Source: Kudoa neothunni (lineage: Eukaryota > Animalia > Cnidaria). Taken from it: a stretch of DNA of 64,000 nt. The position numbers were made by a program, and so were the translations under genes. Positions 20,989 through 53,483 of this stretch are shown here, in pieces. The stretch is taken from positions 7,021,835 to 7,085,834 of the forward strand of contig OZ199838.1 in NCBI GenBank assembly GCA_964304625.1, written 5' to 3'. Positions within the stretch are counted from its first letter, which is position 1. The number at the start of each line of letters is the position of its first letter. The notes under the pieces are model-generated. The model was not told the origin of the DNA. It did not search any database and saw only the letters and a program-made list of their open reading frames with translations.

Positions 20989-22164
20989 TTAAACCCTTTA
21001 AACCTTCCACTGTTAAAATGATCGCTATTATTGTTAGAATCTTTTTGAATGAATTTCTCGTCATTGTAACGATATTATCAGTGCAAATGAACCACCATTC
21101 ACACTTACTAAAAATATCCATTTATAGATTTTGTTCTCAACATCATGATTGAGGTCTGATTTAAAGTTTTTCGATAATTTATCAAAGGTCCTAAACCTCC
21201 TAATTTAACAATTACATCTCACATTAGAATCCCATTCAATGTTGACATTCTTTTTCAGGCCATATTTACCCGTAGTCATTTTTTTAAATTTCTTAACTCG
21301 TCTACTGAATCTTAACATTGAATTATCTTATATTTCTCAGAAAAGCTTTGGTAATTTCGCGGTTAAATAAAATCTATTTAACCGCGATAGTGCACGAAGC
21401 ATGCAAAGTGTACTTTCAGGTACAATTCCATTACGTAAGATCTATATTTTTTATTTATATCATAATTAAGGGTATTCCCTTTATTATAAGTAAGAATTAG
21501 AAAATTCAAATTTAGTTTTGTGTAAAAAAATGGAGATTACGTACGAGCCCTGTTGCATTGTATACCAAAAAATTATATTAACTAAACATTATATTTTCAC
21601 AAGATAATTTATAGTCAAATTCCTATTTCACATATTGAGCTACGAATAAATTAATTTTTTCAGTTTGGAAAGTATACCATCATTATATAGAACTCGTAAA
21701 CTCACTTTTTGGTCAAATAGTTTTGCAACAAAATAGTGTCAATGAATGTAAGTAAAAAATTTGGCAAAATATATGAAGAATAAGGACATTCAAAAGTTTT
21801 TGTAAATTAACGAGAGATTACACATGGGAGCGATTTTTCTCGAAATTAGAGTTACTTAAAATTACGAAATAATTTGTTGAGACTGGATTTTCACCCTTCG
21901 TGTTTATATTTTTTATTAAAAAGAATCATAAAATAAGGAAATGCGCGAAAGAGTGTCTATAAATTGCCACAGACTCCATAATAACCAAAAATTAATACAT
22001 TTCAAATTTTATGTAAAATTTAGTTTGTTAAACATAAAGTGAAGTATAAAATATAAGTGAAATACATGCCATATTTCTGGAAAAATATCGTCGAAGATAT
22101 CCATTTCCTTTGATAACATAAAAATTATTTGTTTTTGATATTCGAATACATTAAAAAAACTTCC

Positions 22165-22250
22165 TGTTAATGCCACCATAAACGCTCATTTTATAAACTA
22201 CTGAAACACGTAACTATGCATATGGATTAAAGTATATCTAGAACTTAACA
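22165..22250 (-). repeat. 3' LTR (86 bp)
   Basis: Direct repeat of 25994-26079 with one mismatch; TG..CA termini with a 6-bp inverted repeat. Confidence 0.95.
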
Positions 22251-22261
22251 CTTTTCCCCTT
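22251..22261 (-). promoter_or_regulatory. Polypurine tract AAGGGGAAAAG
   Basis: All-purine run directly abutting the 3' LTR on the minus strand. Confidence 0.9.
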
Positions 22262-22274
22262 CAATTTTTTGGCT

Positions 22275-25200
22275 TTATAGGTTGATAAAAGGATCCAATA
22301 ATTTCTCATTCCTAGCCTTGTATGGTTTCATTTTATCAAAATTTGTGACGAATTGCTTTCCATTTTTTTCGAGGCGATAAGTAGAATTTGTTATTCTCTG
22401 CTTCACTGTATACGGCCCGTCGAAAAATGGATCGAGTTTATTTTTCCTGACTGGAATTTGGACCCATACCATTTCCCCAGGTTTGTAAGGATTTCCATAG
22501 GCTTTCTTGTTGTATCGGTTTTTCGTTTTTTCCAGTGACAGCTCCATATTCTCTTTTGCCAAATTGTATGCCATCGTAAGATTTGATTTTAAATTTTTTA
22601 CATAACCGTCAAGCGTTTGCAAGGTACTTCCAGTTTCAAAAACAATTTCGATCGCCGATTTAACCTCTCGTCCCATCATAAGGAAATTTGGAGAATACTT
22701 CGAAGAACTATGAGGCGCCGAACGATACGCCATCATAACCAACGGTAGCAAAGAATCCCATTCCGCATGTCGATCAACAACCTTGCTTAACATATCAATT
22801 ATGGTACGATTCAGTCTCTCTACCATGCCGTCTGACTTAGGATTGTATGGGCATGTACGCGTCTTTCTTATTCCAAGCAGTTCACATGTTTGCTTAAAAA
22901 TTGCAGACTCAAAATTGCTCCCTTGGTCGCTGTGAAGTGTATGAGGAAGTCCAAATCTACTAAACACATGCTTTACCAGTTTTTGTGATATCGTCATGGT
23001 TTCTTGGTTTTTGATGGCAAACGCTTCTGCCCATTTAGTGAAGTAATCCTGAATAACTACAATATAGCGATTCCCATTATTAGTCACTCGGAGCGGTCCA
23101 ACAACATCAATAGCTACTCTTTGCATAGGATAGCTACACACTTCCGTATTCAACTCAGAAACAAATTTTTTTGTTTGTCGATTCCTCGCAGCGCACTTTG
23201 GACACGATTCACACCAATTCTTCACATCCTTCTTTTGAAATGGCCAGTAAAAATTTCGAGATACGAATTCATTCACTTTGTTGTGCCCCAAGTGTCCCGA
23301 AGTACTGCTATCATGAGCAATTTTCAAAACTTCTTTTTTCAGTCTGTCTGGTACAATCAATCTAAGTCTAGTCTCCATTGTGGTGTCGTTTCTGAAAACT
23401 CGATAGAGTATATCATTTTCGATTTTCAACATTGATCTCAACTTCCATAAAATTCTAATTTGGTCGCTCCGCTCTTTTGGTTCCACAAGAGGCATTCTAT
23501 TCGTCTTCATCCAACCAATAATTTGGGATACATTTGGATCAGCCATCTGAACTCTTCGAATCAGCTCGTCAGGGAACCCCTTTACTTCGACCGCATTGCA
23601 ATTCTTTGGATTCGGAATTCGAGACAATGCATCGGCGTTCGCATGATCTTTCCCTGGTCTGTGGATTACCTCAAATTCGTACTCCGCCAAAATCTCCAAC
23701 CATCTTGCAACTTGTCCTTCTGGGTTTCTGAAAGACAACAACCATTTTAAGGCGTTATGGTCGATACGAATTATGAATTTCTTTCCAGCAAGATAATTCT
23801 TAAAAAATTTCACAAAATGCACCAGAGCCAACAATTCTTTCCGGGTCGCACAATAATTTCTTTCTCTTTGAAGTAAATTGCGACTTCCAAATGATATTAC
23901 CTTCTCTGTACCATTTATCATTTGAGACAGTACACCACCAATTGCAAGGTTACTAGCGTCTGTATCCAAAATGAATGTCTTTTCCCAATCTGGGTTGGTT
24001 AAGACCGTTGGAGACGTGATTTCCTTCTTGATTGTATTGAAGCTGATCTCACAGTCAATAGACCAGTTCCAGGGAACATCCTTTTTGAGCAATTCATAAA
24101 GAGGGGCAGAAATTTCAGAAAATTTTTTTACAAATCTGCGATAGTAGTTGGCAAGTCCTAGGAATTTTTGAACATCCTTAACATTATTGGGAGTTGGCCA
24201 CTCATTGATAACTTGAGTTTTAGACGGATCAGGGGTTATCCCCTTTTCACCAATGACGTGACCAAGAAAGTGGACCTCCTTCTTATAGAATACTGATTTG
24301 TTTTCGTTAATTTTCAATTTTTTATCTCCCAAAACCTTCAATATCTTCTTGACGTCATCGATATGTTGATTATAGTTTTTACTAAATATTATAACGTCAT
24401 CAAGATAGACCAAACATATCTTCCCAATAAAATTCTTCAAAACCGAGTTCATCATGCGTTGAAACGTGGCCGGTGCATTGCAAAGTCCGAAGGGCATACG
24501 TTTGAATTGGTATATCTCATCAGTACCATAGAATGCTGTTTTTTCCTTATCATTTTCATCAATCAGCACCTGATGGTAGCCATCTTTGAGATCCAGAACT
24601 GAGAAGTACCTTGAACCTCCCAACATATCAAAGATATCATCTATTCTAGGCAATGGATAGGAATCCTTAATCGTTATTGCATTTAGCTTTCGGTAATCCA
24701 CACAGAGCCTAAACTTCCCGGATTTCTTTGGGACAATAACCGCATTCGAAGCCCATTCTGAGCACGACTTTTCAATAACATCATTTTCAACGAGTTCTCT
24801 AATCAACTCGTTCATTATATTTCGCTTGTGAAATGGAATTCTACGTCTTTGGTCTCTTATCGGCACTCTTGTCCCAGTATCAATATAATGATAAATTGGC
24901 TTCTCAATTTCATCATCCTTCTTGGTGGAAATATTCGCAACCATTAAAGACTCAGAGTTAGCTTTCAATTCCAGCGTCTTTTCTCCAATTTTCACAGTCA
25001 ATCCAAGTCTGTTCATCACATCGACTCCAATGATACAATCGTGTATGACATTTTCTATTACATAAAACTTATGGTTTATGCTTTTCCCTTCAACATTTAT
25101 AGGTAACACAGTAATACCCTTAACTTCCATTTCTCCACCACATGCAGATATAACTTTTTCATGGGTGATTTTAATGTGTTGCTGACCCAACAATAGAAAT

Positions 25201-26018
25201 AGTTTGTGGTTTATAATACTAAGTTGCGAACCAGTGTCAAATAACGCACCCACCACAATGTTTTTAATTTGTAATTTCAGAAAAAATAGAGAGGCGTATT
25301 TAGAATTACTACACTTGGTCAAATAACAATGTTTTTTTATATGTCCAAGTTTCCCACATCCATAGCATTTAACAGGGGTTTTGATTTTAAATTTGCTTTC
25401 CAATGCATCCAGCCTTTCCAATATCATATCCTCTTTGTTCTTCCTACCAACTGCAAGAACTTCAGGAATCGGTACTTCTGATACACTCACCATTGTATTG
25501 TTCGCCACAAACTCCAACTTCCTAGCTAGAGTAAGAGCATCTTCGAAAGATACCGGATCCTTAATCATCAAGTTTTTCTGAATTTCTTTACTCCTCACAC
25601 CATGGATGAATTGATTCTTCATCATCTTGTTGATTTGATCCATAGAAACTCCAGTGAGGGTCACAGCCGCTTTTCTACGCAACTCTTCTGCGTATTCGAT
25701 AACGTTCATATTATCGGTTTGGACGCACTCGAAGAATTCTCGCTGAGAGATATAGCCATCCTTAATGGAGCCAAATCTACTAAGCAAGAATTGTTTCATT
25801 CCATTATAATCAGATGTCATTGTCCATCCAGACTCTGTCACTATCTTAAATACTATTGGTGACAATGACACTAGTAGTTCCAATGAATGCTTTTCTGGTG
25901 GAATATTTCGATGAACTAACAATAATTCAAATCGAGCACACCATGCCTCTGCATTTTTCCCATCAAACGGTTCGACAGTAGCTACTGCGCCAATGTTAAT
26001 GCCACCATAAACGCTCAT
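22275..26018 (-). CDS. Single-frame Gag-Pol polyprotein (capsid, CCHC knuckle, protease, RT, RNase H, integrase), 1247 aa
   Basis: PFDG..W Gag start, CYGCGKLGHIKKHC, ALFDTGS, MPFGLCNAPATFQ, YLDD, DTDAS, HHCC (H..GHLG..CPKC), DVVGP/SDQG/GMVER integrase core, GPY. PR-RT-RH-IN order indicates Ty3/Gypsy. Confidence 0.97.
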   Translation of the reverse strand: MSVYGGINIGAVATVEPFDGKNAEAWCARFELLLVHRNIPPEKHSLELLVSLSPIVFKIVTESGWTMTSDYNGMKQFLLSRFGSIKDGYISQREFFECVQTDNMNVIEYAEELRRKAAVTLTGVSMDQINKMMKNQFIHGVRSKEIQKNLMIKDPVSFEDALTLARKLEFVANNTMVSVSEVPIPEVLAVGRKNKEDMILERLDALESKFKIKTPVKCYGCGKLGHIKKHCYLTKCSNSKYASLFFLKLQIKNIVVGALFDTGSQLSIINHKLFLLLGQQHIKITHEKVISACGGEMEVKGITVLPINVEGKSINHKFYVIENVIHDCIIGVDVMNRLGLTVKIGEKTLELKANSESLMVANISTKKDDEIEKPIYHYIDTGTRVPIRDQRRRIPFHKRNIMNELIRELVENDVIEKSCSEWASNAVIVPKKSGKFRLCVDYRKLNAITIKDSYPLPRIDDIFDMLGGSRYFSVLDLKDGYHQVLIDENDKEKTAFYGTDEIYQFKRMPFGLCNAPATFQRMMNSVLKNFIGKICLVYLDDVIIFSKNYNQHIDDVKKILKVLGDKKLKINENKSVFYKKEVHFLGHVIGEKGITPDPSKTQVINEWPTPNNVKDVQKFLGLANYYRRFVKKFSEISAPLYELLKKDVPWNWSIDCEISFNTIKKEITSPTVLTNPDWEKTFILDTDASNLAIGGVLSQMINGTEKVISFGSRNLLQRERNYCATRKELLALVHFVKFFKNYLAGKKFIIRIDHNALKWLLSFRNPEGQVARWLEILAEYEFEVIHRPGKDHANADALSRIPNPKNCNAVEVKGFPDELIRRVQMADPNVSQIIGWMKTNRMPLVEPKERSDQIRILWKLRSMLKIENDILYRVFRNDTTMETRLRLIVPDRLKKEVLKIAHDSSTSGHLGHNKVNEFVSRNFYWPFQKKDVKNWCESCPKCAARNRQTKKFVSELNTEVCSYPMQRVAIDVVGPLRVTNNGNRYIVVIQDYFTKWAEAFAIKNQETMTISQKLVKHVFSRFGLPHTLHSDQGSNFESAIFKQTCELLGIRKTRTCPYNPKSDGMVERLNRTIIDMLSKVVDRHAEWDSLLPLVMMAYRSAPHSSSKYSPNFLMMGREVKSAIEIVFETGSTLQTLDGYVKNLKSNLTMAYNLAKENMELSLEKTKNRYNKKAYGNPYKPGEMVWVQIPVRKNKLDPFFDGPYTVKQRITNSTYRLEKNGKQFVTNFDKMKPYKARNEKLLDPFINL
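25981..25992 (-). promoter_or_regulatory. Primer-binding site TGGCGCAGTAGC (tRNA-Ser-like)
   Basis: Begins 1 nt inside the 5' LTR boundary with TGG, complementary to tRNA CCA. TGGCGCAGT resembles Ser-tRNA PBSs; the tRNA identity is inferred. Confidence 0.75.
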
Positions 26019-26079
26019 TTTATAAACTACTGAAACACGTGACTATGCATATGGATTAAAGTATATCTAGAACTTAACA
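25994..26079 (-). repeat. 5' LTR (86 bp) containing the gag ATG at 26018-26016
   Basis: Direct repeat of 22165-22250; minus strand reads ..TTTCAGTAGTTTATAAAATGAGCGTTTATGGTGGCATTAACA. Confidence 0.95.
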
Positions 26080-26192
26080 CTTCCCAAAATAATTTTGTCC
26101 CAAATGTCGCTCGTAATTTTAAGTATTTTTATTTAAACTTAATACTTTTGCTTTGATACTTCCCACGCGTTGCGCACGCAACTAAACCCTCT

Positions 26193-29100
26193 ATGAGAAA
26201 ATTTTCATGCGTTGCTAGAATTCCACAAAACTTTTGTCTCTATAGGAATTTATGTGATTTTTCGAATGTAAAAAGAGCAGAAAAAATCGTTCTGCCGAAT
26301 GTTAAATCATCTTTCAATAGCAGTAGCTTTCACGAGCTTAATTCTTTTGTTTTGAGTAAAATTTAGAGGTTTTGAGCACTGGGGAATGGTTAGATTTGGA
26401 GAATATTAATTTATCGTTTGTATCGAGCAGTGAGTTACATGCGGATAATTCAGATCATCAAATCCGCCCAAATTACGTGTATATTGATGAATTAGAAATT
26501 AACGCTCGATTAAAGATTCCATTGTGCAACAATAAAGTGATTGCAAATTATGTCAATTTATTATTTTATTTTTTCATAAGATTATCAAAGTTTTATCGTA
26601 TTTGAGGATATTATGGCTCAATAATAAAATTGATCTTATCGAAGAAAATGTGGTGAGATATATGCTGGTAGTGCTATATCAGAAAAGTCGGTTTCTGAAT
26701 GATCCAATATTGTTAAAAAAATTGTTACTTGAGAATCAAGATCTCCTTAACCACAACGGTAACGACAGTACAATTTCTGTGTTGAATTTGGTGCAACCGA
26801 AAAATCTTCTTCACACACTATCAGATGTGATCGATTGTTGAAAACTTTATTTTTAATGTCATTTTATAGTTTCTGGCTTTGGATTGGAATGGAAAACGCA
26901 GATTCACTCCAAGTGCTAGCCAGTATGTTGATTTATTGGTTAAAAGATTGGCAGCAATCAATAAATTATGCGACAACGAAAAATTAACAACCTCTCCAAT
27001 TATTGATAATATTCCTGAAATTGGCCAAAAATACTATGATAAGTATTGGTTTTCACCCTGCAAAACTACCATATCTTCAGATATTGAACAACTATACAAG
27101 ACTCAATTTGATACAGAAAAAAACTGTATTGATTGACTTACTTAATGCCAAAACGAAAGATAACTTTTATTTTTGTTAATAGATATGGTCAGTATTCCTA
27201 TATGGAATAATACTAGAGATGAAGCGTCAAATGCAGCTTCTCCTGATGGGGTTGGTGTTGATAAAGATGATAATTTATATGAAAATCTGCTAAAAGATAT
27301 CACCAACCATCTAGCTCGATCTTTGATAGAATCCAGAAGTAATGTTTTCCAACAATTTTTAATATCGCCCTTTATTTGAGTACATTTATATTATGTTTTT
27401 TGTAATTTTTTAAGTTATCAGACATATACAATTTAAATATTTTCTTATAATTAAAAATGATATTTATTATTAAAAATAATATGGTTATTAGATGATTGGA
27501 AAAGTCATGCTAAATCATATTATTCTTCATTTTCCGACGCTTTTGATGTCGATGATATCAAACACATTAGTGATTGCACTGTGAAGAGTCTATTTATGAT
27601 GGCGGGCCGATCATTCAATATTATACCCAAATCACATTTCGTTAAATGTATTAAAGGTATAATTCAGCACCGTATAAATTTTAAATGGAATGAAAAATTG
27701 TTTTGCCATCAACATGTATGTGTACATGCTTGTGAATGTGTAAGCTGTAATTTTTGTAATTAGATGCAGTCAGTCCAATTTCACCTATACGACACTATGT
27801 ACAAACATCCCAAGCTGTGGTATCATCCCAGAGTGATCGCTAAAAATTATATGCTTGATCGTTGGGACTGCATTCCATTTGATCAATCCGAGTTATGTTT
27901 TGACTCAATGTGTTTCACCAAGGTGACCATTCTTTACTCTCATATATCTCTTAATATGTCATTTTAGTTTGCATTGAAAACCTATGAGCAGCTTATTGTC
28001 GTGTTGTCAATAAAATTTCCTAACCCTTATTTCTATGTTTCCAATAATAGCTTAACAATCCGCCGGGGGAAAGAATTTATTGACCTAGTGGATAAGTATC
28101 AAAAATATTTGTATTTTCCATATTATAAAGTGCCCATGTTGGTACCCCCAAAACCATTTATTGGTTCATACAGTGGAGGTTATCTGACCAATTTCAGCAG
28201 CTTTATCAATAGCACTGAGAATATTGGTACTGCCAAGTTGTGTTTTGAGAGAGCAAGGGGCGATAAATTATCTATTGTGCTTGATTCCTTAAATGCTTCT
28301 GCTTTTAACGAGCTTCGAATAAACGATTTCGTTCTCGATACTTTGATCTCGTTCGCCAATGATAACGCTGAATATCACAATCTAAATTGGCTGCAACAAA
28401 TGATCCAAATAAATACTTCTACTAAATCTGGTATGTTCTTTTTGCTGAGATGTATCACTTTCAAAGAGCGGGGTTGAGAAGATTTATTAGGGAACATTTG
28501 GTATTATTTTAGCATACGCTTAATCATTTTTTTAAATCTACGAATTTAACTATAAATTTAATTTGGCCGTATAATAATTGGAGATTAATATTTTTTAAGA
28601 TATTTATGTTAATTCTAATAAATTTTATATTTATTAAATAAATATAAAACCTGACGAATCGTTATCGTTTTCCCTGTTTTTTATCTCTAGCACCGATTAT
28701 TTATGTACTTCAGAATATTTTTATTATTTTTAAAATAATTTTCTTTTATCATAAGGAATAGAATATATTTCTCAGTCATAATTTAATTGATGATAAGAGT
28801 GAATGAGAAGAAATATTTTATAAAAATTTGGAAATCTTGTTTTTATAGTTGATTTATAAAAATAATTAAGCGAAGTTCAGTTAAATTATAAATCATATTG
28901 CACTTTTAAAATTGGAGCTTATTTGTGAACAACATGTAATTTTTTAAATTTTCATTGATTTTATATGATCTTTTTTTGACCAAAAATTTGGGTTATGCCT
29001 GAGTTAAATGCCAACTATTAAATTGTAAGAAGGAATTAGTTAATCATATTTATCAATTATAAGGTCTCAAACATCATTTTGGGAGGCTAAAATTATCGGA

Positions 29101-32100
29101 AATTCAGATTAACATAGAATTAAATGTCTAACAATTTAATTTTAAAGTAATACGACTTCAATGTAAACCTAGGTCGTTTTTGTCCTTTGAAAAATTAGAA
29201 ATGCGGAATCGTTATTTTGATGCAGTAATAACCTGATTAAATTATTTATATTGTTTTTTGAAATTATGATTTGAATATGTTTGTATTAAAAAAAGTAATT
29301 AATCACATTTAAATGAAAATTTATTTGATACAAATTGCCTTCCGTTAGTATTCTGGCCAAGATATTTACGTGCTTGATAAATATCTATTCGAGTTAATAT
29401 AACTTGGTTATTTAGAATTATTTTTAAAATATTTGGAGAAAATATGAGGTGACCAAATTAAATAAAAAATATAAAACTGGAAGGATGATAATATTAATTT
29501 TAATAAAAAGAAACTGTTGAAATTTGGAAAATATAAATTTAAATTACTCTATGAAATATTCTTCTCTTTTTATTGTGAACAAAGTAAAATTAGAAAGTTT
29601 ACTTAAAAAAACTTGATTGAAAAATTCAAATAAATGGAAAATGCTCATGTCTAAAATAGTACCTCTTCCAATATCGCGCCTCTTCTGAGATTTGATCGTT
29701 TGAGTGAAATTAAAAATTTTTTTATTGAATTTATATTTTATCGCTAACTTTGATAACATAATAATAGATGGGGGTGCTGGGACGTCGTCAACAATGGGAA
29801 ATCATTACCTTCGAAATATCGTTTCTTTGGGTTGTTATCTCCGGAACAAAACCATATGGTTACCACAATACATGGATTTTCGTGGCCGTTTTTATCCCCA
29901 ACCTAATATAATTTCTCATTACGGTGGTGATCTTGAAAGGTCGCTATTGATTTTTGCAAAAAAGAAACTTGTGGGCCCACAAGGTCTTAAACAATTAAAG
30001 ATTTATTTTTCTACTCTTATTCATGGCTCTCAACTGCTAACCGAAGATGAACATCTCAAATTCACTGATTCCTGCGTGAACACTATCAAAGAAACAGCGG
30101 AGAATCCCAAGAAAAATCTGTGGTGGGTAAAACAAGACAAAATTTTCCAAATTCTTGCCGTGTGCAATGAAATCTACCAAACATTAAACAATATTGACAG
30201 CTACATGTCAGGGTTTCCTATTTATATCGATGCAACTTGTAGTTCGTTCCAACATGTGGCAGCTCTCACTCGGGATCCAAAATTAGCTGAGTAATGTCAA
30301 TAACCGGTTTGCACTACCCCTTATATTTATTTTGATTGTGTTTTAGGCTGACTAATTTGTGTGGTGGTTCTAATCGACAAGATCTATATATTGAGTTCTG
30401 TAAAATGCTCGGTAACTATCATCCCGGTAATTTTAATATTCCTGCTCCAGTTTAATTCTTAAGCGTCTGAACGCAATTTTTCTTATACTCTTTAAATTCA
30501 ACTTTGGTAATTGCCCTCTTTTTGGAAAAGTTCCCCGGGAACACGTACCATTTAAATAAAGTCATTTTTATTTCAGTCTAATTTTGCTGTATAATGAATT
30601 ACTAATTGTCTCATTCTTTTGTATTGATAGCGCGTTATATTCAATTTACTTTTGTTATAATATGAATTGACTTGTTCATATGGCGTATTTATTTTAAAAT
30701 TATAGAAACCACAATGAAGGATTTATATTTTCTAATATATTTTGTGTATGTTTATTTTTTTAATCATTATTTTATTATGTTAGATTTTTTATTACGCATT
30801 AATTAATTTTATCACTCCACCAAAAATAACGTATAGAATCTATTGTTGCTAATATTTTTAATTTAAATAAATCTTATTCTTAGAAAGATTGATTTTTATT
30901 ATTTATTTAATTAATTAATTTTTGTTATTAGTCCATTATTGGAATTACTTTGAGTATTCCAAAAATTGTTGTTTCTTCCGACTCACATTTCTTGTGTTTC
31001 TTATTGATAAAGTCGATTGTATTAGTTTAATCTTAAATGATTTCTAATAAAATAATACGCTCATTTATTTAATGTTAAATCAACTCGTGTTATTTCTTGT
31101 CTCATTGTCGCAGAAATTACCAACCTAAAGTCAATTCTATGATCTAACACTTCTGTATAGTCATTTTTTAATCTCCTCAATATATTAATGTATTTATTAA
31201 ATGTTGCATCTTTGTTTGTACTATAAATAATCTGATGTAGCTTTCTCGAATCATTAAAAACAATAAAATTTCGATCACATTAAGAACTGACAGCCCATGT
31301 TGATAGTGTTCATGGAAATAAAAATGACAAATTTCTTGTAAATAAATATATATCCAAGTTCAATTGACAATAAAATTTAAAATTGAATTTTCTGTCACAT
31401 TTTAAATTTGTTATTTTATTTTTTCAATAATTTCAAATGCATTATTTATCGCTAGGACAAATCATATCTCAGATTTAATTCAAAAGAATGTTTAACGATA
31501 AACGTACAATATGTAATAGCGCGATAATCATTTTTAATAGTGTATACATTATTTCTTAAAATAATTTCGATTTGTGGTTTCTGTTTTGGTTACATTTAAA
31601 AATAATGGTTTAGATCTCGTCGTGGATAGAAAACTTTCAAAATTATGTCTTATAACATTTCTCTATGGAAACACAAACCTTGCTAGACACAGCCGCCATA
31701 AGTTTGCTATTATCAATACCCAAGGATCAATAACTTTGTATAACGAATCTATTAGACACACTATGTTTACAGAATTCCCATCAATCAAAAATTTATATGT
31801 GAGATTTAACTGTTTATTGTATGTGGATAGTTATGATTGGCTTTTTATAAAGATATGGACAAACGATATATGCCGCCGATTCAAAAAACTGGATAAACTG
31901 ATACATTGGGACACCCCCTTCAATATTCCCATATGCTTGTTTGACCGTGAGTACACCAAGATAACTCTATTCTCCAATTACTTTTTCACCGTTGTGTATC
32001 CAAAATACTTCGATGTTACGGTATCTTAATTACTATGTACTTATAATAGGAAATGTCTATCATCGTATATAAATTTAAGCCTGTTCTTGTAATTTTTAAA

Positions 32101-35100
32101 TCATAATTGTTTTTTAATTTTGTATGGATTATAAATGATCAACTATAATAGATTTTTAAATATAAAATTTTAATCGCTTTAAGAATTGGGGGCTTTTATG
32201 GTTTAAAAATAGTGTTGGCCCCTATTTATTGAATCATTATTAATTTCTACAGATCCAACGAGCTTTTTCTAGAATGATAATAATTTTTTATCCATGAATA
32301 AGTTAATTCAGTATTTCATGATAAAAATGTAATTTGTCTAAACTAAAATGAAAGATGACTTAAAATTATCTAAATTTCTAATTATTAATCTTTTCCGAGT
32401 TAAGACAGCGAGTGAAATAGGACTCGGAGTGATTTCGATAATTTTGACCGTTCGGAAATGAATTTATTGGGTTCATTTATAGTTGCTTTAAACAGATCTT
32501 TTTGATTGGAGGTTTTTGTTCATGACATTTTACTTTAATGGATAGAAACATTCTTTAAATGGATTTGAAAACGGACTGTATGGTGTTAAGAACAAGAGTT
32601 TGTGGCCACTTTCTTCAGTTTACCACTTGATCAAATCGGTTTTGTGGAGCCGTACATCATCCATTATTAGAAGTGAATTTTAAATATCATGGACGTTGAG
32701 GCCAAACAATAATTTCTTCTTGAATAATGAGAAAATATCTGGGTTGGCTGATCGGTTCTCCAGATGGGAAGGCCAAAATTTTTAGACGATATCGTTGCAA
32801 TCAAGGTTACATTTATTGCCGAATAATTTTGAGCATAAGGTTTGTTTTTATCTCAATGCATGATCTCCCCAATGATTTTCTCATTGGTAAAGAAAACCCA
32901 GATTCATCAATCTAAGTGATGATGGGGTTTACAATGAAGATCAAATGTAACATAACTATAAAATATAAATAAAATTCCAACTGGATTTATAGTCATCTTT
33001 TTCTTTTTAATGTCACTTACGGAGAATTTTCTGTCATTAGAACAAGTGATATTTTTCAATAAAATATTAAATATCTAGTTCATTAACAAATCATATATGA
33101 TTACAAATTTATTTAATTTGGTCTAAACCAGTGTTTTCCAACGTGGGGCGTATACCCACCCATTACCCATCATCCAGTATATAAAGAAATTAAGTTTATT
33201 GCTAATATTTTGAATTGAATTTATCATGTGAATATAACATACTGTTTCAATTATGCCAATGATATTTATCTTTTTAAAAAGAACTTTTGATAATTGAAAC
33301 TTATTTCCATATTTTGAGTGGAACCATTCTTCCTGTAAATAGCTCTCAAATCTGGAATTACTTACCTCTTTTTTAATTCTCAATATTTTATGTTTCAAAT
33401 GTCTCCTACAGGATTCTATTGTATTCGAATGCATACCGTTATATCAGAAGCCTAATGAATGATTAACAATAATATGATTGTAATTGGATTCATTCAATTT
33501 TGGATGGTCCTTCCATTCGCTTCCGTAGATCTTAGTACCGTTGATGACTTCCTTTTGAAATGTAGGAAGTAATGTTTCCTTATTTCATCTTTTACCATAG
33601 AGTATCTGATCACGTTAAGTTGTCTTTTTCCGTTGCTATCAACAGAAGACAGGTGTTGGCAAAAGACCCACAGACCGTCGATCCCATCATCGCATTTTTC
33701 CTGATACAAAGAAAGGGCTAATTAGTTTTTTGAAATTAAGATTGAAAACATTTGTGCACATGCCCTCCTTGAATATTTCTTTATTATTAGGTAGATATTC
33801 ATTAATATAGCTATTTAACTAAAAAGTGACCTAGTTAAACTTTTCACATGTTATACTGGACACAGCGGCGGTGTGAGACAAAAGTTCCTCATTTACAGAG
33901 CACTTCCATTTATCTCCCTTAAGACGTCGGCCCCTGTTACTTTTTCGTTTCCCGTGAAGTAAGCTTTCGTCGATTTTAACTACAACTTTTTCACCCCAAA
34001 TAGTTTCCTATCCTTAACCCTTTCATGCGAAATGTCCACCCTAGTACCAACAAAATTAAACATCCCATAAAAATGCACGTTAAATTTATTTAGATAATTT
34101 ATTGAATTATAGAATTTTATAAAAGTTAATTGTTTGTTTTCAGTAATGGTCGATTATGTAAACTAAGAGATCTAGCATTTATAGTAAGTTTAATAGTAAT
34201 CCTTACATAAAATCAACAAGGAATACAAGAAATTCACATTTATACACATGCAGCCAATTTTTTCCTATCAAAAAAAAATTAAAATTACGAAACGTTAAAA
34301 CGTTGTTTAATGCGCTATATTTCATAAGATATATAGCAACCTATCAAAAGATAATGACTGCTCAACACGTGGGTACTAGGATGGACATTTGACATTCGTG
34401 GATCTCCGGATTTCTAATACATGGATCACGATTTGGTTTTTAAATGTTCAACAGAGGGAAATACGACAACTAAAATTGTGGTAATTTCTGATGCCGATAT
34501 TTCTGATCCAGAAGAATACGTTTAAGATTTTGGAACACAGAATCTCGAACGAAGGGTGCTTGAAGCGTACACCGAAAATAATCAAGATTCAGACTGTTCT
34601 GATGAGGAAGTTGTACCAACCTTTAAGTGGAATGTAAGTGAAACCTTTGCAAATATGCCAAATAATTCGGAGACTGTAGATATTGTTTTTAGTGAAGTTA
34701 CCGATAGATTATATCAACTTCTTTTTCAATGAAGATCTGATTCTGTTAATTATTGAACAAACAAATTTATATTCGGTTCAGCAAAATTCTAGTTTTCAAG
34801 TTGGTAAAGAAGATAAAAAGTTGATAGGAACGTTGATTATCATGGGAGTTGTTAAAATACCGAGATATCGTTGCTATTGGTCTAAAACTCTAAATTACCT
34901 ACCTGTTTCTGAGTTTATGTCGAGAACCCACTTCGAAGGTATTTCAAAATATTTACACTTCACTGATAATTCAAAAATTATCACAAGTCCGAATTCTTCA
35001 GAATATGATAAATTTGCAAAGATTCGACCGGTTTTGGATTCGATTAGAACAAATTGTTTGAAAGTTGAATGTGGACGAAAGAATTCAATTGACAAACAAA

Positions 35101-38100
35101 TTATTCCATTCAAAGGTGGGTGTAAAGCGAAACAATATGCTCCGAATAAACCGACGAAATGGGGATTTTAAATGTTCGTGAGGTGTGGAGTTAAGGGACT
35201 AGTGCAGGATTTTTATCTGATGATGCGAAAAAACCTGATGTGGTTAAAGTTGTGCGAGAGTTTTCCCTTGTCCAAAACATATTTTGTCAACTTCGACAAC
35301 TGGTTTACATCCATTCCCTTTCAAATTTTATTAAAAAAAGGAGCATTTACTCGGGGGAACCATTCGCAAGAATAGAGCAAAGGGATGTCCATTACAGAAT
35401 CAGACTGATTTGAAAACTCAGGGGCATTCGAGAGTGTGCACGACTCTAATAATAATATTTCCATAAAGCGTTGGTTTGATGGATCTGTTGTAACTCTCTC
35501 ATCTACCCATTCTTCAAACCAACCGATTAAAATGGCGAAAAGATTTGACCGCTCCAAAAAATCATGATTGACATTCCGTGTCCTGCAGATGTAGACGAAT
35601 ATAACCAAAATATGGGAGAAGTGGACCTTTCAGATATGTTGATGTCGCTCTACATAACGAAACATAAATGTAAGAAATATAACATGCGAATTTTCTTCTG
35701 CACCCTCAGTACATGTATTATAAATGCGTGATTATTACACACACGAAAATGAAATATTCAAAAAATTTCTAAGAGAGATAGACTGGACTTGATGAATTTT
35801 TCATTGAAAATAAGCGAAAGTCTTCGTTATTACCAAATAGCAAGTGCTCCCAAAAAACGTGGTAGACCGTCTCTTAATAATTCTTTGGAAAAAATTGATG
35901 GTAAATATGAAAGATCTAAAATAAGAAAACATCCTCTCAGTAATCATATTCAACTGTATAACGTAGGGAATTTTCCTGAAATAGAGTCAATTAAATCCAG
36001 ATGTAAAATATGCCAACGAAAAACTCAATTTAAATGCATTAAATGTTATTCCTTTTGTTGTATTGTGAAAGATAGAAACAGTTTTTTAAATTATCGTAGT
36101 CTAAATATCTAAGAAATTTTCAAATTTAGTTTGCTTGTTTTTGTGCACAATTCAATGCGCGAAATCGTTGTTTTACCACCGATACCAAATGTCCACCTCA
36201 GTACCCAGATTAAAAACAGCTAAAATTATATGTCGAATTTGTTTTTATCACAATAAAATCGTTAAATATAGAATATTGAGTGCTTGTAATATATTTAAAA
36301 AAATCGTGAAATGAAATAAAAAATTTGAGTACGAAAGGGTTAAAGGCTCTCGAGAAAATGAATCGTATGTTTTTAAACCAATTTATCCCGTAATTTTTAA
36401 TATATGTACCAACGAGCAAGTGGATTCTATTGTATTATTCATATACCAATAATGAATTATCTTCATTATCTATTTTATAATTATTTTGGATTTTTTTGTC
36501 AAACCTTTGGGGGAAATATCTTAAAGAGGTGGGACTGTGGTCTTACATCTTACCGATTGAAAAAATAAGGAGCCTAATTTGTTTATTATTTTTTGTATGC
36601 GTAAATAGTCTGATATTTATTACTGTCAACAGAAAAATAGTTTTCAGTAATAATGTATTCTTTCATATTGTTTCCTCTTGTGACATCTGCGATTTTTACA
36701 TCTCGTGGATATCCTCCAGCTTATCATTTGAATTGATCATTCTCAATGAGCGCGTTGATTTATCATCATATCGTAAAATGAGATTAATAAAATTGAGTAT
36801 GTCCCTTGAGAGAGAAAGTTTCTGACAAAAGCACAGTTTAAATAAGGGATTTATATACTAGGTCCACTTAAATGACAACACTGTTCCATTGCAGCCCAAA
36901 AGCGATAAACACGGCAAAAGATGCTGTAATTCTCACCTCGAAATCAAACCGTGGTCCGTATATACCACGTGTTCGAAACAATATTTATTTGTAAAATACA
37001 ACATTTTTTTCATAAATAAATCTGAAAAACATTGAAAATGAACTTATTATCGATTCAACGTATTCGGCTTCATCTAAAGGTCAGGTTTAGCATTATGTTG
37101 TGTACCTTAATTATAATTTAGTTTTTCCGAAAATACCTGATTAAAATTCGGATTTTGACACAGAGACATCAATAATATCATCAAACTCATCTGAGGAATC
37201 CAAAGATTTAGCGGTATCATTAAATGAAGAAATATCAAATAAGGACCCTCAAAATCTAAGTCACTATTAGTATATTCGATTTCTCGAGAATCACTTGAGT
37301 GTTCAGTAGATATAACCTTACGAATATGGTTATATTAAAATCTGAATTAAATTTTCCCTTTTCCATATCGGAGTCCGTCCGGTTTGGTAACGGATTAAAC
37401 GAATAATTTTTATTTTTAAATACTGCTATACTTTGTACTTAATAGGATACAACAAAAATTGAGATTTGTCAAATAATTTATTATTATTTTTACATTTAAT
37501 GTGTTTCTCAATACATTATATCTGAATTAGGATGTTAAAAAGTTTATATGATAATTGCGTTTATTTCGAGATAGCCGCTTTTTGATAAATTGGTTATGTT
37601 GCGTGATGATACTTAATGCATATCATGGCATAGTAAATGATTTTTGAGTTTTCTAAAATCATTCAGTAAATCGTTAGTTATTGTCAAAGTAACAAATTAA
37701 GTTGTTTTTTTTAATGGTTGAAATTTTAAATTCCATTAATAAAGTAATTGAGAATTATTCTGTGAAGTTTTTAAATTGATACCGAATAGTACATTTTCTT
37801 TTATAAATTTAGCGTTTAATTAACCCAAAATTGAGTGAACTATTGTTATTAAATTTCTGGATAATTCTGTGAATACTTCAAATATTTTCAGGATGAATAC
37901 AACCTATGACTAATTTTTAGATAATAAAGTGGGTGTTATCTATGATGATATGAACTCGTTTTGGATTTCTGATGGATTGAAATAACTAATTTTATTTTGT
38001 TTAAATTGATAGATAGACTATATTATTATTTACATAAAAAGTTGAGTTATCTAACTAAATAGTAATTAAAAATATATCAAAACGGATGATAAATTAATCC

Positions 38101-45232: not shown

Positions 45233-48200
45233 TTATTGTTGTAGGACGTTATTTCGACGGCATGTTAGATGATTGCCATTCGAGGTAATGCCAGAACTAA
45301 CATCATCACTGCCATTTTTCATGATTTCTAACAGGAGGTCAATATGTTTAAATTGCCATTCCCAATCGGGATTGTAAAGGAAAGGTCGGAAATCTCCCCT
45401 AATAACAAAAATAATAAAATTAGAAATTCGATTGATGACAACAACGAACCTATTGTCGTCTGGGGTGGCTGCATCCAAGTGTACCGAAGGTGGAAGAATG
45501 GTTGTTTTGTGTCGATTCGTGCCGTATCGTCCGAAAAAGCGTTTGATAACTCGTGCGATATCATCAGGCTTGAGGTTGTCTTCATTTTGTTCTCTGAACC
45601 AATAATGACAAGCTCTTCTGAACATGGACACGGGACCACAAAGCTCAACTTTCCTCAAATACCTCAAATATTTAAGTTGTTTGTAGGTGATTCCCAAATC
45701 GGCCTAACATTCACAGAATCAAATATAATCATTATATCCATTATAGCAGCGCCGGGAAAAGTGCAGAACCATAAACACTTCGGTCAATTTTAATTTTTAA
45801 TGTGTACCGATTTATTAAGTGGTAACTTTGTACCCAGCGCCATCAAACATTCATCGTAATGCTGCATTTTTTCATTTAAAAAAAATATAGGGTGATACTA
45901 AACTAGAACAAAAATTATCTATATGTTGCGATATATTAAAGATTATCGATAGTTTTTATTAAATAAAAAATTTGGCAACTCGTAATGTATTTATTGGTGT
46001 GTTCCCTCAACATGAAAGTGTGCATAAGATTGAACTGCATTAGATAGATAGCATTGCATTAGTTAGAACGCGAAAAACAAAAATAAATGTGTACAGTGTC
46101 GATTACCTCATCCGATTGACCAACATTACTAATGTCGCAAATGGGAGTGAGTTCAGCCGATGGCGTCGCCTTCAATACTTCACGAATGGATTTCAAATTG
46201 CGTTTTTCACACATGAACTCAAGAATTTTATGTATATCATGTTTGCTCAAGTCCCCAACAATATTTACATCAGTTGACGAGCAGTCGTATTTGGTGAAAT
46301 AACCGGTAACTCTAAAGATTATAATTTTAACGACTAGACACGCAGCACTTAACGATTGCATACGTTTCATCTGCATTAGCAGAACCAACTACTAGAAGGG
46401 GGCCGCCGGACTTGTGAGACGCAGTTTGTGTGAACAGTTGGGCAGTAGCGTAGGCGACAATGGATCTAACGCGAGCCTGGACATTCTGTAATGATATATC
46501 TTCATTAGAACTACCTCCATGAGCAGCAAATTTTGGTTTAGGGATATTTAATGAGTCGGCTACTGTTGCAATAACATTGTCACAGATGGATTGAACGTTC
46601 GATTCGTAAAAAACGCAGCCAATTTCGTTGGTAAAATCCTTAGCCCGCTGTTTGCTAGCAGCAGTTGACTGATTAGTGGTCATGTAGCATGTAACAAGTA
46701 GTCGGCCACAAATATCTTTCACCGATTTAGGAACAAATGTGTTATCCTTCAATACGGATCTTAACTGATTGAGCAATAAACATGAATGGTGACTCTTAGG
46801 TTGGGTATTCAATTCGTTGTAAAGTTTCTCACAAAGAATATATATGAGGCCAGCAACCGCGAGTACTATCAGCACCTACGAATCATTCAACTAAAAATTG
46901 CGAAAAACAAAGCATACCTCCACTTAACGACAAATAACAACCGCCCAGACCACTTCTAAACAAATAATCCCACAACCAACACACAGGTGCATTGATGAGT
47001 TCTTCTGTATCGTCACAAAGTTTGTAAGCAATAGTCTGATCATCAAAGCTTTTCTTGTAGATAGTACCAGGTGTGAAACAATCTTGTAAACAGATATTTC
47101 TATCGATTCTAATTTTTGGAATAACTCGAGCCTCTGAAGCAACCGAAGCCCATGACATGATCGAACTACGTTTACCTTTGACCTTTATTATTATTCCCAA
47201 ATAAATCACTTCTCTTCGTTACACACACACAAATTAGTTTACCTCGTCAAGATCGATGTAAGCGGAACGCACATTATAACCTTCGGGACAGAAGTTGAAA
47301 CGGGGAATAAATTCCAACAATTTTCCACAAGAAGAAATAAAACTGCCACCATCAAAGTACAATCTACCTCCATCACATCCAATAAGGTTGGAATAGAGAT
47401 AGGCACAACCACAACGTTTTGTAGCAGCTAACACCAAATCGAACCTTGCGCCTAGCTTACCACGTTGAAAGTGACTACCACTACCGTTGGTAATAATTTC
47501 GGCACCATTCAACACCTGAATCTGGTGTAGATTGTTGGGTACAAACAACTCTTCACATATCTCGAAACCAATACACGTATCGAGGAATTGCACCAAACAC
47601 ACCCCAATTGGTATTAACTCTTGGCCGGAAGCTTTCTTGATAACGGGTGGCACAATCCAATCTTCGATTTCCTTCTTGCGCCACGGAGTAAACCATCTTC
47701 CTTCATGATAGTTGCTATCATTGGCTAGAATAGTTTTGGGACGTATGCAAATGATTTTTCCATCAAGTATGATTGCTCTCGCGTTGTATCGTACACCTCG
47801 ATGGTGTATCAAACACCCAAGATCAATCACAATACCATATAAATCAACATCTCCAAGTAGACGCGCTATCAATTCGTAGTTGTGATGTAGAGTATCCAAC
47901 TCAAGAAAATGATCCTCACACGTATATCCTACAATTCCAAAAATTTAATAAATGGATTTAGGATAGGAATTTCGAATTGGTCAACCTAATCTCTTGTTAT
48001 CATTTATTGTAATATCAATACATTATAAGCATATTTTAAAAGGGCGTCTAAATTTAAATAACTATTATATAAACAATAAAATTAAAGTCTTAAAATTAGA
48101 AAGACGACCAAAACCTTTGAAGAATTCGGTGATTAATTGCAATTAATAGTTATCTTAAACAACTAAACGCATCATGAAGCAAATCTGTCATGCCTGTATG

Positions 48201-52900: not shown

Positions 52901-53483
52901 AGAGAACGCCTATGGGGATGGGATCGTATGAGATGTAGAGAAAAGGGACTCTCATCAACGAAAATTAGATTGAGGTATCTTAAGTTGATGAGGATTCCTG
53001 TATACCAATTGACATGATCTAACCTTTCTGCTTTTACGCTAGAACAATTTCTACTTTGGGGAATCAGCCCCGTCATTTTAATAGATGTCTTTGACTTATA
53101 AGCCATTTGTATATAGTAGATTGGCAGACTTATACTCCAAGTTTTTCAATAATTCCACTCAGAGTGATATTGCAATCATCCTCAATGAAACAAAGAAGCT
53201 TTTCCTGAACATCATTCGTTAATTCGGTGGTTTTTGCTCCACCTTTTTGATATTTTAAATGAGTTTCCTTTAATTCGTATTTTTTAATAATATCGCTCAG
53301 TGTAGAGCGCGGAATTTTTAGATCTTCAGAAACTTCTTTCTGAGATTTACCTTTCTGGATGACAAGATATATCGCAGCTTCGCGAATTGAGTTTGGATGT
53401 TCGATTCTTTTGGGCATCTTGGTCACTACAAATCCGGATTTGAATTACGCGCAGTCCGGATTGGGGGTAAAAACCCGGTATTG
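49955..53483 (-). mobile_element. Tc1/IS630-type element inserted in Merlin, itself interrupted by a piggyBac
   Basis: TIRs CAA(A)TACCGGGTTTTTACCCC.AATCCGGACT, TA at 53484. HTH ORF 53130-53426; DDE ORF 52579-53106 (FVDESPF, LPRYSPLLNPCE); C-terminal tail resumes at about 50170-50262. Confidence 0.82.
50267..52520 (-). mobile_element. piggyBac (PGBD2/3-like) pseudo-element inside the Tc1
   Basis: TTAA-CCCATTC end; SIDEQMVPYFG, NKPVRFGFK, MDGVDLAD, CAVC..CSGC..H..C tail; GTGTCGTAAACGACAC palindromes. The other boundary is inferred from where Tc1 coding resumes. Confidence 0.8.

What the first reader, a model, noticed from the sequence alone, without database searches (positions are those of the whole stretch)
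25981..26079. Gag start codon lies inside the LTR; the LTR end and PBS are translated
Seen: the only ATG opening the full 1247-aa frame (26018) lies 25 nt inside the 86-bp 5' LTR. The frame runs through the LTR terminus (ATT AAC A) and the PBS (T TGG CGC AGT AGC), giving MSVYGGINIGAVA. Known: LTR elements normally have an untranslated leader with gag downstream of the PBS. The next Met is about 66 codons later and would delete the PFDG..W capsid N-terminus. Inference: about 40 nt serve at once as integrase attachment site, tRNA-priming site and capsid code. Translation and tRNA priming would then compete on the same RNA, possibly acting as a translate-versus-package switch. A TCAGT Inr-like motif about 14 nt upstream of the ATG suggests a nearly leaderless mRNA.
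Basis: partly seen in the sequence, partly recalled or inferred. Interest (0 to 1): 0.9.

Follow-up and report, generated by a model that had tools for sequence, protein, structure and literature searches.

The report
Retrotransposon Gag starts inside tiny LTR
An intact gypsy-type jumping gene with unusually small 86-bp terminal repeats starts its coat-protein gene inside the repeat and translates through the tRNA primer site, a layout shared by its relatives and already known from yeast Ty1.

Summary
On the minus strand, 22165-26079 is an intact Ty3/gypsy LTR retrotransposon. It has two 86-bp LTRs (85/86 identical, TG..CA ends), a 5-bp target duplication (GGAAG), a PBS one base after the 5' LTR, a polypurine tract, and one 1247-aa Gag-PR-RT-RH-IN frame. 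The only ATG opening that frame lies at LTR position 62. Codons 1-13 are therefore encoded by the last 25 nt of the LTR, a 1-nt spacer and the PBS.

For one element this is not beyond chance (about 0.2). However, all eight other distinct elements found with a closely related Gag also have an in-frame ATG 6-16 codons upstream of a TGGCG PBS. Their LTRs range from about 66 to 190 bp. The PBS is always read in the same frame, which leaves a protein-level N/T-I/V/N-G-A "shadow" of the LTR end plus PBS. A distant spider relative with 756-bp LTRs has the usual order: LTR, PBS, ATG.

The encoded peptide is a predicted disordered tail ahead of a capsid-like fold.

The principle is not new. Ty1 has a 53-nt leader, its AUG in the LTR and its PBS inside GAG. 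I found no description of this layout in a Ty3/gypsy lineage. The transcription start, the near-leaderless mRNA and the translate-versus-package switch remain untested.

The parts
26080..26084 (-). Target-site duplication GGAAG, 5' side of the element
   Evidence: the same 5 nt lie directly outside both LTRs.
25994..26079 (-). 5' LTR, 86 bp, TGTTAAG...TTAACA
   Evidence: 85/86 identical to the 3' LTR. The termini fit the published Mag-lineage LTR end motifs in part: the 3' YAACA matches, and the 5' TGTTRKR motif has one mismatch.
26036..26041 (-). CACGTG (E-box-like) at LTR position 39-44. It contains the only LTR-LTR mismatch.
   Evidence: L005 has the same hexamer at a similar place. Function unknown.
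26029..26033 (-). TCAGT initiator-like motif, with its A (26031) 13 nt upstream of the ATG. Candidate transcription start, not demonstrated.
   Evidence: TCA(G/T)T lies 11-24 nt upstream of the ATG in 4 of 9 family members versus 0.87 expected.
26019..26024 (-). TATAAA immediately upstream of the ATG. Too close to the LTR end to leave an R region if it served as the TATA box. Possible poly(A)-signal variant when read in the 3' LTR (inference).
26016..26018 (-). Gag-Pol start codon at LTR position 62-64
   Evidence: the only in-frame ATG between the upstream TAG and codon 66.
25993..25993 (-). 1-nt spacer (T) between the LTR end and the PBS
   Evidence: Relatives have 1-2 nt here.
25981..25992 (-). 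Primer-binding site TGGCGCAGTAGC, read as ..T GGC GCA GTA GC (Gly-Ala-Val-Ala)
   Evidence: A TGGCG core lies at the same place and in the same frame in all nine elements. It looks tRNA-Ser-like from memory, and the Mag lineage is reported to use Ser or Leu. The tRNA identity was not tested.
22275..26018 (-). Single 1247-aa ORF: capsid-like Gag with a CCHC knuckle, then protease, RT, RNase H and integrase
   Evidence: Pfam; best solved relative is Ty3 Gag-Pol (7q5b), E 1e-107; capsid-like fold for residues about 17-180.
22251..22262 (-). Polypurine tract GAAGGGGAAAAG abutting the 3' LTR
22165..22250 (-). 3' LTR, 86 bp. It carries a second copy of the ATG (22187-22189), which opens a 12-codon frame running into the flank.
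22160..22164 (-). Target-site duplication GGAAG, 3' side

Best explanation
Window 22165-26079 (minus strand) is a young, apparently intact Ty3/gypsy LTR retrotransposon with Mag-lineage features and ultra-short 86-bp LTRs.

Shown:
- Its genomic RNA also serves as the Gag-Pol mRNA, and the frame opens at an AUG in the R/U5 part of the LTR.
- The first 13 codons are encoded by the last 25 nt of the LTR, a 1-nt spacer and the tRNA primer-binding site. The LTR end matches published Mag-lineage integrase recognition motifs.
- This is an inherited trait of the element's clade.
- The translated att-plus-PBS gives a short, predicted disordered N-terminal tail (motif N/T-I/V/N-G-A) ahead of the capsid fold. 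Protein-level constraint on it is weak, so the nucleic-acid signals can dictate the sequence.

Inferred:
- Transcription must start upstream of LTR position 62, so U3 is at most about 50-60 bp here and at most about 38 bp in a relative with a 66-bp LTR.
- The leader is probably only about 10-25 nt.
- R is at most about 35 nt.
- Part of the promoter may lie downstream of the start site.
- A translating ribosome and an annealed primer tRNA cannot occupy the same RNA stretch at once.
For: Anatomy:
- LTRs, target-site duplication, PBS, polypurine tract and a single intact ORF.
- Pol is closest to Ty3 among solved structures.

Conservation:
- Closest relative L001 (55% aa identity; contig circularly permuted, LTR about 190 bp): ATG 28 nt inside the LTR end, same frame through AAC-AAT-GGC-GCG.
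- L009 (LTR 66 bp), L011 (87 bp), L010 (about 79 bp), L008 (about 142 bp), L006/L007, L004 and L005: each has an in-frame ATG 6-16 codons upstream of TGGCG.
- L009 and L011 contigs begin exactly at TGTT, as expected where assemblies break at the outer edge of a repeat.
- In 6 of the 8 uninterrupted elements the next in-frame ATG lies 28-114 codons after the PBS, inside the conserved Gag core. L010 reaches a stop instead.
- Chance is about 0.2 per element; nine of nine show it.
- N-termini MSV, MSD, MSD and MSD use four different Ser codons.
- Protein alignment places the N/T-I/V/N-G-A motif 8 residues before the conserved F/Y-D/N-G..W motif.

Other evidence:
- Distant relative L003 (756-bp LTR) has LTR, then a tRNA-Leu-like PBS, then the ATG 3 nt later. 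This is the conventional order.
- Residues 1-11 have pLDDT below 50. The rest folds like PNMA2, dArc1, Arc, Copia and Ty3 capsids.
- Ty1 precedent.
Against: - No transcript, ribosome or protein data exist for this element. The transcription start, the poly(A) site and hence the R boundaries are unknown.
- TATAAA sits directly before the ATG. If it were the TATA box, transcription would start at the LTR end and miss the ATG.
- Two relatives (L004, L009) also have an in-frame ATG 5-8 codons after the PBS, so downstream initiation is possible in some members.
- The related elements share ancestry and were partly found through gene calls that need a start codon, so the combined probability is overstated.
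- LTR limits in relatives other than the window are inferred from one LTR copy each.
- Host species and primer tRNA were not identified.
- The RNA fold of the 5' region is no more stable than shuffled sequence (z = -0.70).
Confidence: 0.8

Rival explanations
1. The LTR ATG is fortuitous. Gag really initiates after the PBS, at a non-AUG codon or a later AUG, and the LTR/PBS 'codons' are an untranslated leader that merely happens to be open.
For: - For a single element, an open frame with an ATG upstream of the PBS arises in about 20% of shuffles.
- L004 and L009 have an in-frame ATG 5-8 codons after the PBS.
- The encoded tail is predicted disordered and varies in length.
Against: - Nine of nine distinct elements keep the ATG and the frame.
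- In 6 of the 8 uninterrupted elements (L010 reaches a stop) the next ATG is 28-114 codons downstream, inside the conserved capsid core.
- MS(D/V) N-termini use synonymous Ser codons.
- Length differences upstream of the PBS are in whole codons.
Confidence: 0.1
2. Transcription starts downstream of the ATG, driven by the TATAAA at LTR position 56-61. The 5' LTR ATG would then be absent from the normal genomic RNA, and only read-through or upstream-initiated RNAs would be translated into full Gag.
For: - A canonical TATAAA abuts the ATG.
- L011 has a similar AT-rich stretch there.
Against: - A start about 25-30 nt after that TATAAA would fall at or beyond the LTR end. That leaves no R region for the first strand transfer.
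- Relatives with mapped TATATA motifs have them 38-52 nt upstream of the ATG, which predicts a start before the ATG.
- Conservation of the ATG argues that it is used.
Confidence: 0.05
3. The overlap is an evolved regulatory switch. Primer tRNA annealing, together with Gag/NC binding at the PBS 26 nt after the AUG, blocks translation and commits the RNA to packaging, while translating ribosomes strip the primer. It adds to the best explanation rather than replacing it.
For: - Geometry only: the PBS begins 26 nt after the AUG.
Against: - No data here bear on it.
- The overlap may be no more than the result of shrinking the LTR and leader.
- There is no significant RNA structure around the AUG and PBS.
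- In relatives the distance from ATG to PBS ranges from 6 to 16 codons.
Confidence: 0.3

Closest known systems
Ty1 (and Ty2) of Saccharomyces cerevisiae, Pseudoviridae
   Same: [quoted passage not shown] Ty1 has a 53-nt 5' UTR and its PBS at RNA nt 95-104, so about 14 codons precede the PBS. In Ty1 one short 5' domain serves translation initiation, packaging and reverse-transcription initiation (PMC5454406; PMC4974528; silent PBS substitutions in PMC6844567).
   Different: - Ty1 is Ty1/copia (order PR-IN-RT) with 334-bp LTRs (LTR length from memory). It uses tRNA-iMet and a bipartite PBS, and GAG and POL are separate frames.
- The window element is Ty3/gypsy (PR-RT-RH-IN). Its LTR is 86 bp, its PBS is TGGCGC-type, it has a single fused frame, and only 8.7 codons precede the PBS.
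- The shared layout is therefore convergent, not inherited.
Mag lineage of Ty3/gypsy (mag of Bombyx mori, mosquito Mag-like families, SURL)
   Same: - Short LTRs (119-304 bp in Culex), often one ORF, PBS for tRNA-Ser or tRNA-Leu, and mostly 5-bp target duplications (PMC3286476).
- LTR termini TGTTRKR...YAACA (PMC3601003).
- mag itself is recalled to have 77-bp LTRs (from memory, not checked).
   Different: - I found no statement that Mag-lineage ORFs start in the LTR or include the PBS.
- Placement of this element in the Mag clade was not tested by a tree with reference sequences.
- The Gag of this clade has few database relatives.
Trichonephila clavipes gypsy-type elements (P0005, locus L003)
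   Same: Gag-to-integrase homology over 98% of the query at 35% identity. Single-frame Gag-Pol, and the LTR ends ...TAACA.
   Different: The LTR is 756 bp and the PBS is tRNA-Leu-like. The ATG lies 3 nt AFTER the PBS, so the LTR and PBS are untranslated. This shows the conventional order in a more distant relative.

Membership tests
LTR retrotransposon | Two direct terminal repeats with TG..CA ends, flanked by a 4-6 bp target-site duplication | tested here: met
   86-bp LTRs, 85/86 identical, TGTT...AACA ends; GGAAG on both sides.
LTR retrotransposon | PBS starting TGG within a few nt of the 5' LTR, and a polypurine tract abutting the 3' LTR | tested here: met
   TGGCGCAGTAGC lies 1 nt after the LTR. 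GAAGGGGAAAAG abuts the 3' LTR.
LTR retrotransposon | PBS complementary to the 3' end of a host tRNA | not testable with these tools
   There is no tRNA gene in the window and the host was not identified. A tRNA-Ser assignment rests on memory and on the Mag-lineage literature.
Ty3/gypsy (Metaviridae) | Domain order protease, RT, RNase H, integrase; pol most similar to Ty3-type elements | tested here: met
   Pfam order Asp_protease 249-340, RVT_1 429-589, RT_RNaseH 677-780, Integrase_H2C2 889-947, rve 964-1060. Best solved match is Ty3 Gag-Pol 7q5b, E 1e-107.
Ty3/gypsy (Metaviridae) | Gag with a retroviral-type capsid fold and a CCHC knuckle | tested here: met
   AlphaFold2 model with mean pLDDT 85. 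Foldseek hits to PNMA2, dArc1, Arc, Copia and Ty3 capsids. CX2CX4HX4C at residues about 218-231.
Mag lineage | Short LTRs, a single ORF, PBS for tRNA-Ser or tRNA-Leu, LTR termini TGTTRKR...YAACA | tested here: inconclusive
   LTR length, single ORF, 5-bp duplication and the YAACA end fit the published descriptions. The 5' end TGTTAAG has one mismatch to TGTTRKR. The primer tRNA was not identified.
Mag lineage | RT/RH/IN phylogeny clusters with reference Mag sequences | not tested
The named hits carry only automatic names.
Ty1-type 5' layout (AUG in LTR, PBS inside gag) | An in-frame start codon upstream of the PBS, with the frame open through the LTR end and the PBS | tested here: met
   Window and eight relatives.
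Ty1-type 5' layout (AUG in LTR, PBS inside gag) | Mapped transcription start upstream of that AUG, and protein evidence for its use | not testable with these tools
   No RNA or protein data. Only an initiator-like motif.
Ty1/copia (Pseudoviridae) | Integrase placed before RT in pol | tested here: not met
   Integrase is C-terminal. The element works like Ty1 at its 5' end but is not a member.

The most novel reading that the evidence does not exclude
A whole clade of animal Ty3/gypsy elements has compacted the LTR to 66-190 bp. To do so it makes R, U5, the integrase attachment site and the tRNA primer site all part of the Gag coding sequence. That leaves a U3 of only about 30-50 bp and an mRNA leader of about 10-25 nt. 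The core promoter would then depend largely on sequences downstream of the start site. Every insertion and every solo LTR would also carry a promoter plus a start codon able to read into host DNA. The N/T-I/V/N-G-A peptide would serve as a protein-level marker for finding this architecture in databases.
Probability: 0.4. Interest if true: 0.55.

Novelty: new variant of a known kind. Interest (0 to 1): 0.4.

Why it matters
- It shows that the Ty1-style overlap of translation start, LTR end and tRNA primer site is not a yeast curiosity. It arose independently in an animal Ty3/gypsy clade, together with some of the shortest LTRs on record.
- It sets limits on how small a functional U3, R and U5 can be.
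- It gives a simple protein-level signature for finding such elements.
- It affects annotation. Tools that mask LTRs before calling ORFs, or that assume gag begins after the PBS, will truncate Gag in this family.
- Because the principle is already established for Ty1, it extends known biology rather than adding a new mechanism.

Tried and rejected
- Whole-polyprotein search: found many pol relatives, but only P0001 shares the Gag.
- Gag-region search among full-length proteins: returned only P0001.
- Scans of JGI metagenomes, IMG/VR and GTDB genomes with a Gag alignment: the first alignment (A1) was too diverse to search with, and alignment A2 found nothing.
- Host identification through the piggyBac transposase: uninformative. 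There is no tRNA gene in the window, so the primer tRNA could not be checked.
- Literature search for the PBS string: only unrelated primer lists.
- Phrase searches for an ORF starting in an LTR: nothing relevant. This is weak evidence of absence, because the library is limited.
- Gag N-terminal profile against PDB sequences: no hit. The fold search was needed instead.
- RNA folding of the 5' 132 nt: no structure beyond shuffled sequence.
- Considered and rejected: a mis-delimited LTR. The ATG and the following 25 nt are present in both LTR copies, and the target-site duplication fixes the ends.
- Considered and rejected: a DPE at +28 to +32 from either candidate start. No match by eye, so it was dropped.
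L010 has an in-frame stop and was left as it is.
- The POLRMT-like exons were searched one at a time by reference.

Full report
**What is there**

The finding lies on the minus strand. Reading that strand shows a complete LTR retrotransposon at 22165-26079.
- The two 86-bp LTRs are at 25994-26079 and 22165-22250. They differ at one position and have no chance matches in shuffled sequence.
- The LTRs begin TGTTAAG and end TTAACA.
- The pentamer GGAAG flanks both ends as a target-site duplication.
- One base after the 5' LTR comes TGGCGCAGTAGC, the primer-binding site (PBS).
- A polypurine tract (GAAGGGGAAAAG) abuts the 3' LTR.
- A single 1247-aa frame (22275-26018) lies between the LTRs. Pfam places protease, RT, RNase H and integrase in the Ty3/gypsy order.
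- The best solved relative is Ty3 Gag-Pol (7q5b, E 1e-107).
- One mismatch between the LTRs and an intact frame point to a recent insertion.

**The observation**

- The ATG that opens the frame is at LTR position 62-64 (26016-26018), 25 nt before the LTR end.
- The same ATG is present in the 3' LTR copy, so it is inside the repeat.
- An in-frame TAG lies at LTR position 35-37. No other ATG occurs before codon 66.
- Codons 1-8 and the first base of codon 9 are LTR sequence. The PBS supplies Gly-Ala-Val-Ala.
- TCAGT is at LTR position 47-51, with its A 13 nt before the ATG.

All statements of fact in the finding are correct.

**Is it more than chance?**

For one element it is not. In shuffles of the 62 nt upstream of the PBS, an in-frame ATG with no following stop appears about 20% of the time. 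The test therefore has to be comparative.

The whole-polyprotein search found many pol relatives, mostly from spiders and other arthropods. Only one of them, P0001, shares the Gag (55% identity overall, 45% in Gag). A separate exhaustive search with Gag residues 1-240 found a handful of short proteins whose N-termini align with the query from the first residues. All of them carry an N/T-I/V/N-G-A motif eight residues before the conserved F/Y-D/N-G...W motif. That motif is the translation of ..AACA, spacer, TGGCGC.. The DNA confirms this:

| Locus | LTR (limits inferred) | ATG | Junction |
|---|---|---|---|
| L001 (circularly permuted contig) | 385-574, about 190 bp | 547 | TTAACA, A, TGGCGCG |
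| L009 (contig starts at TGTTAC) | 1-66 | 39 | ATAACA, A, TGGCGCT |
| L011 (contig starts at TGTTGGG) | 1-87 | 64 | CCAACA, AT, TGGCGTG |
| L010 (degenerate copy with an in-frame stop) | about 79 bp | 315 | not read |
| L008 | about 142 bp | 205 | not read |
| L006/L007 | not defined | 347 (L006) | not read |
| L004 | not defined | 297 | not read |
| L005 | not defined | 128 | not read |

- In all nine distinct elements the PBS T is the third base of a codon. An in-frame ATG lies 6-16 codons upstream.
- In six of the eight uninterrupted elements the next in-frame ATG lies 28-114 codons downstream, inside the conserved core. L010 reaches a stop first. L004 and L009 also have one 5-8 codons after the PBS.
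- Four elements begin MSV or MSD, with four different serine codons.
- If the elements were independent, the joint chance would be about 10^-6.6. This figure is overstated, because the elements share ancestry and were partly found through gene calls.
- A more distant relative from Trichonephila (L003, 35% identity) has 756-bp LTRs, then a tRNA-Leu-like PBS, then the ATG 3 nt later. This is the conventional order.

The translated LTR end and PBS are therefore a conserved trait of a subclade with very short LTRs.

**What the peptide is**

An AlphaFold2 model of Gag 1-240 (18-sequence alignment, mean pLDDT 85) gives pLDDT below 50 for residues 1-11. Residues from about 17 form a two-lobed helical domain. 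Foldseek matches that domain to the PNMA2, dArc1, Arc, Copia and Ty3 capsids. The LTR/PBS-encoded residues are thus a flexible N-terminal tail, variable in length and sequence among relatives. A tail under weak protein-level constraint is the kind of region that can tolerate sequence dictated by nucleic-acid signals.

**How it most likely works**

Shown:
- The frame, its conservation and the overlap of signals.

Inferred:
- For the AUG to be on the mRNA, transcription must start before LTR position 62. U3 is then at most about 50-60 bp here, and at most 38 bp in L009.
- R plus U5 is at most about 35-40 nt.
- The leader is short.

Evidence on the start site:
- TCA(G/T)T lies 11-24 nt upstream of the ATG in 4 of 9 elements, against 0.87 expected. 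This is suggestive only.
- Three relatives have TATATA 38-52 nt upstream of the ATG, which also predicts a start just before it.
- The TATAAA that abuts the window's ATG cannot be the TATA box without eliminating R. It may act as a poly(A)-signal variant in the 3' LTR (inference).
- With so little U3, part of the promoter probably lies downstream of the start (inference).

Because the PBS begins 26 nt after the AUG, an annealed primer tRNA and an elongating ribosome exclude each other. Whether that is exploited as a switch is untested. The 5' RNA has no structure beyond shuffled sequence (z = -0.70).

**Comparison with what is known**

It does not hold for the best-studied one.
- Ty1 RNA has a 53-nt 5' UTR and its PBS at nt 95-104 (PMC5454406).
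- Helper constructs disable the PBS with silent substitutions (PMC6844567).
- The Ty1 literature already treats this region as a combined domain for translation initiation, packaging and reverse-transcription initiation.

The window element works like Ty1 at its 5' end. It is not a member of that family, because integrase is C-terminal.

Its short LTRs, single ORF, 5-bp duplication and YAACA end fit published descriptions of the Mag lineage (PMC3286476; PMC3601003). No tree with reference sequences was made. Four literature searches found no description of a Ty3/gypsy or Mag element whose ORF starts in the LTR. The library is limited, and Repbase could not be screened.

**Verdict**

The feature is real and conserved. 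It is a Ty3/gypsy clade with 66-190 bp LTRs that has converged on the Ty1 5' layout, so it is a new variant of a known kind. The near-leaderless mRNA and the switch remain hypotheses.

**Housekeeping**
- The POLRMT-like exons were searched singly by reference.
- The host species was not identified.

Noticed in passing
window 25977-25988 (-): The PBS and the six bases after it form a perfect 12-nt palindrome (CAGTAGCTACTG). It could pair between two RNAs, as PBS palindromes do in some retroviruses. It is not conserved in the relatives read.
   Followed up: partly
window 26036-26041 (-); L005 about 93-98: A CACGTG E-box-like hexamer sits a few bases upstream of the initiator-like motif in both the window LTR and L005. 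The single difference between the window's two LTRs falls in it (CACGTG in the 5' LTR, TACGTG in the 3' LTR).
   Followed up: no
window 22151-22189 (-): The 3' LTR copy of the start codon opens a 12-codon frame (MSVYGGINRKFF) that runs out into flanking DNA. Insertions and solo LTRs of this family could donate a promoter plus a start codon to neighbouring sequence.
   Followed up: no
window 55692-57341 (+); 34683-35171 (+); 51206-51769 (-): One intact 549-aa piggyBac-type transposase ORF (DDE_Tnp_1_7, E 6e-71) and two piggyBac fragments. The closest database relative is 67% identical, from an unnamed assembly.
   Followed up: partly
window 52579-53106 (-): Tc1/mariner-type DDE_3 transposase fragment.
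   Followed up: no
window 27974-28477 and 29704-30294 (+): Exon-like ORFs matching the N-terminal and catalytic domains of single-subunit (mitochondrial-type) RNA polymerase. The retrotransposon lies about 1.9 kb upstream of them on the opposite strand. It may sit in an intron or in the 5' region of that gene.
   Followed up: no
window 47234-47899 (-): Exon-like ORF with a carbon-nitrogen hydrolase domain (host gene).
   Followed up: no
L005 867-1790: In this relative the Gag frame stops at 183 aa and is followed by an ORF with an IS1595/Merlin-type DDE transposase domain. This looks like a DNA transposon inserted into the retrotransposon.
   Followed up: no
L001 1-3931: The contig of the closest relative is circularly permuted (pol 3' end, LTR, PBS, gag-pol) with one LTR copy. 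An assembler collapsing the two LTRs, a tandem copy or a one-LTR circle would each give this result.
   Followed up: partly
L003 3055-3189: The Trichonephila relative has three 45-bp tandem repeats (EMKSDLTASM.. units) at the start of its Gag. This long coiled N-terminal extension is absent from the window element.
   Followed up: no
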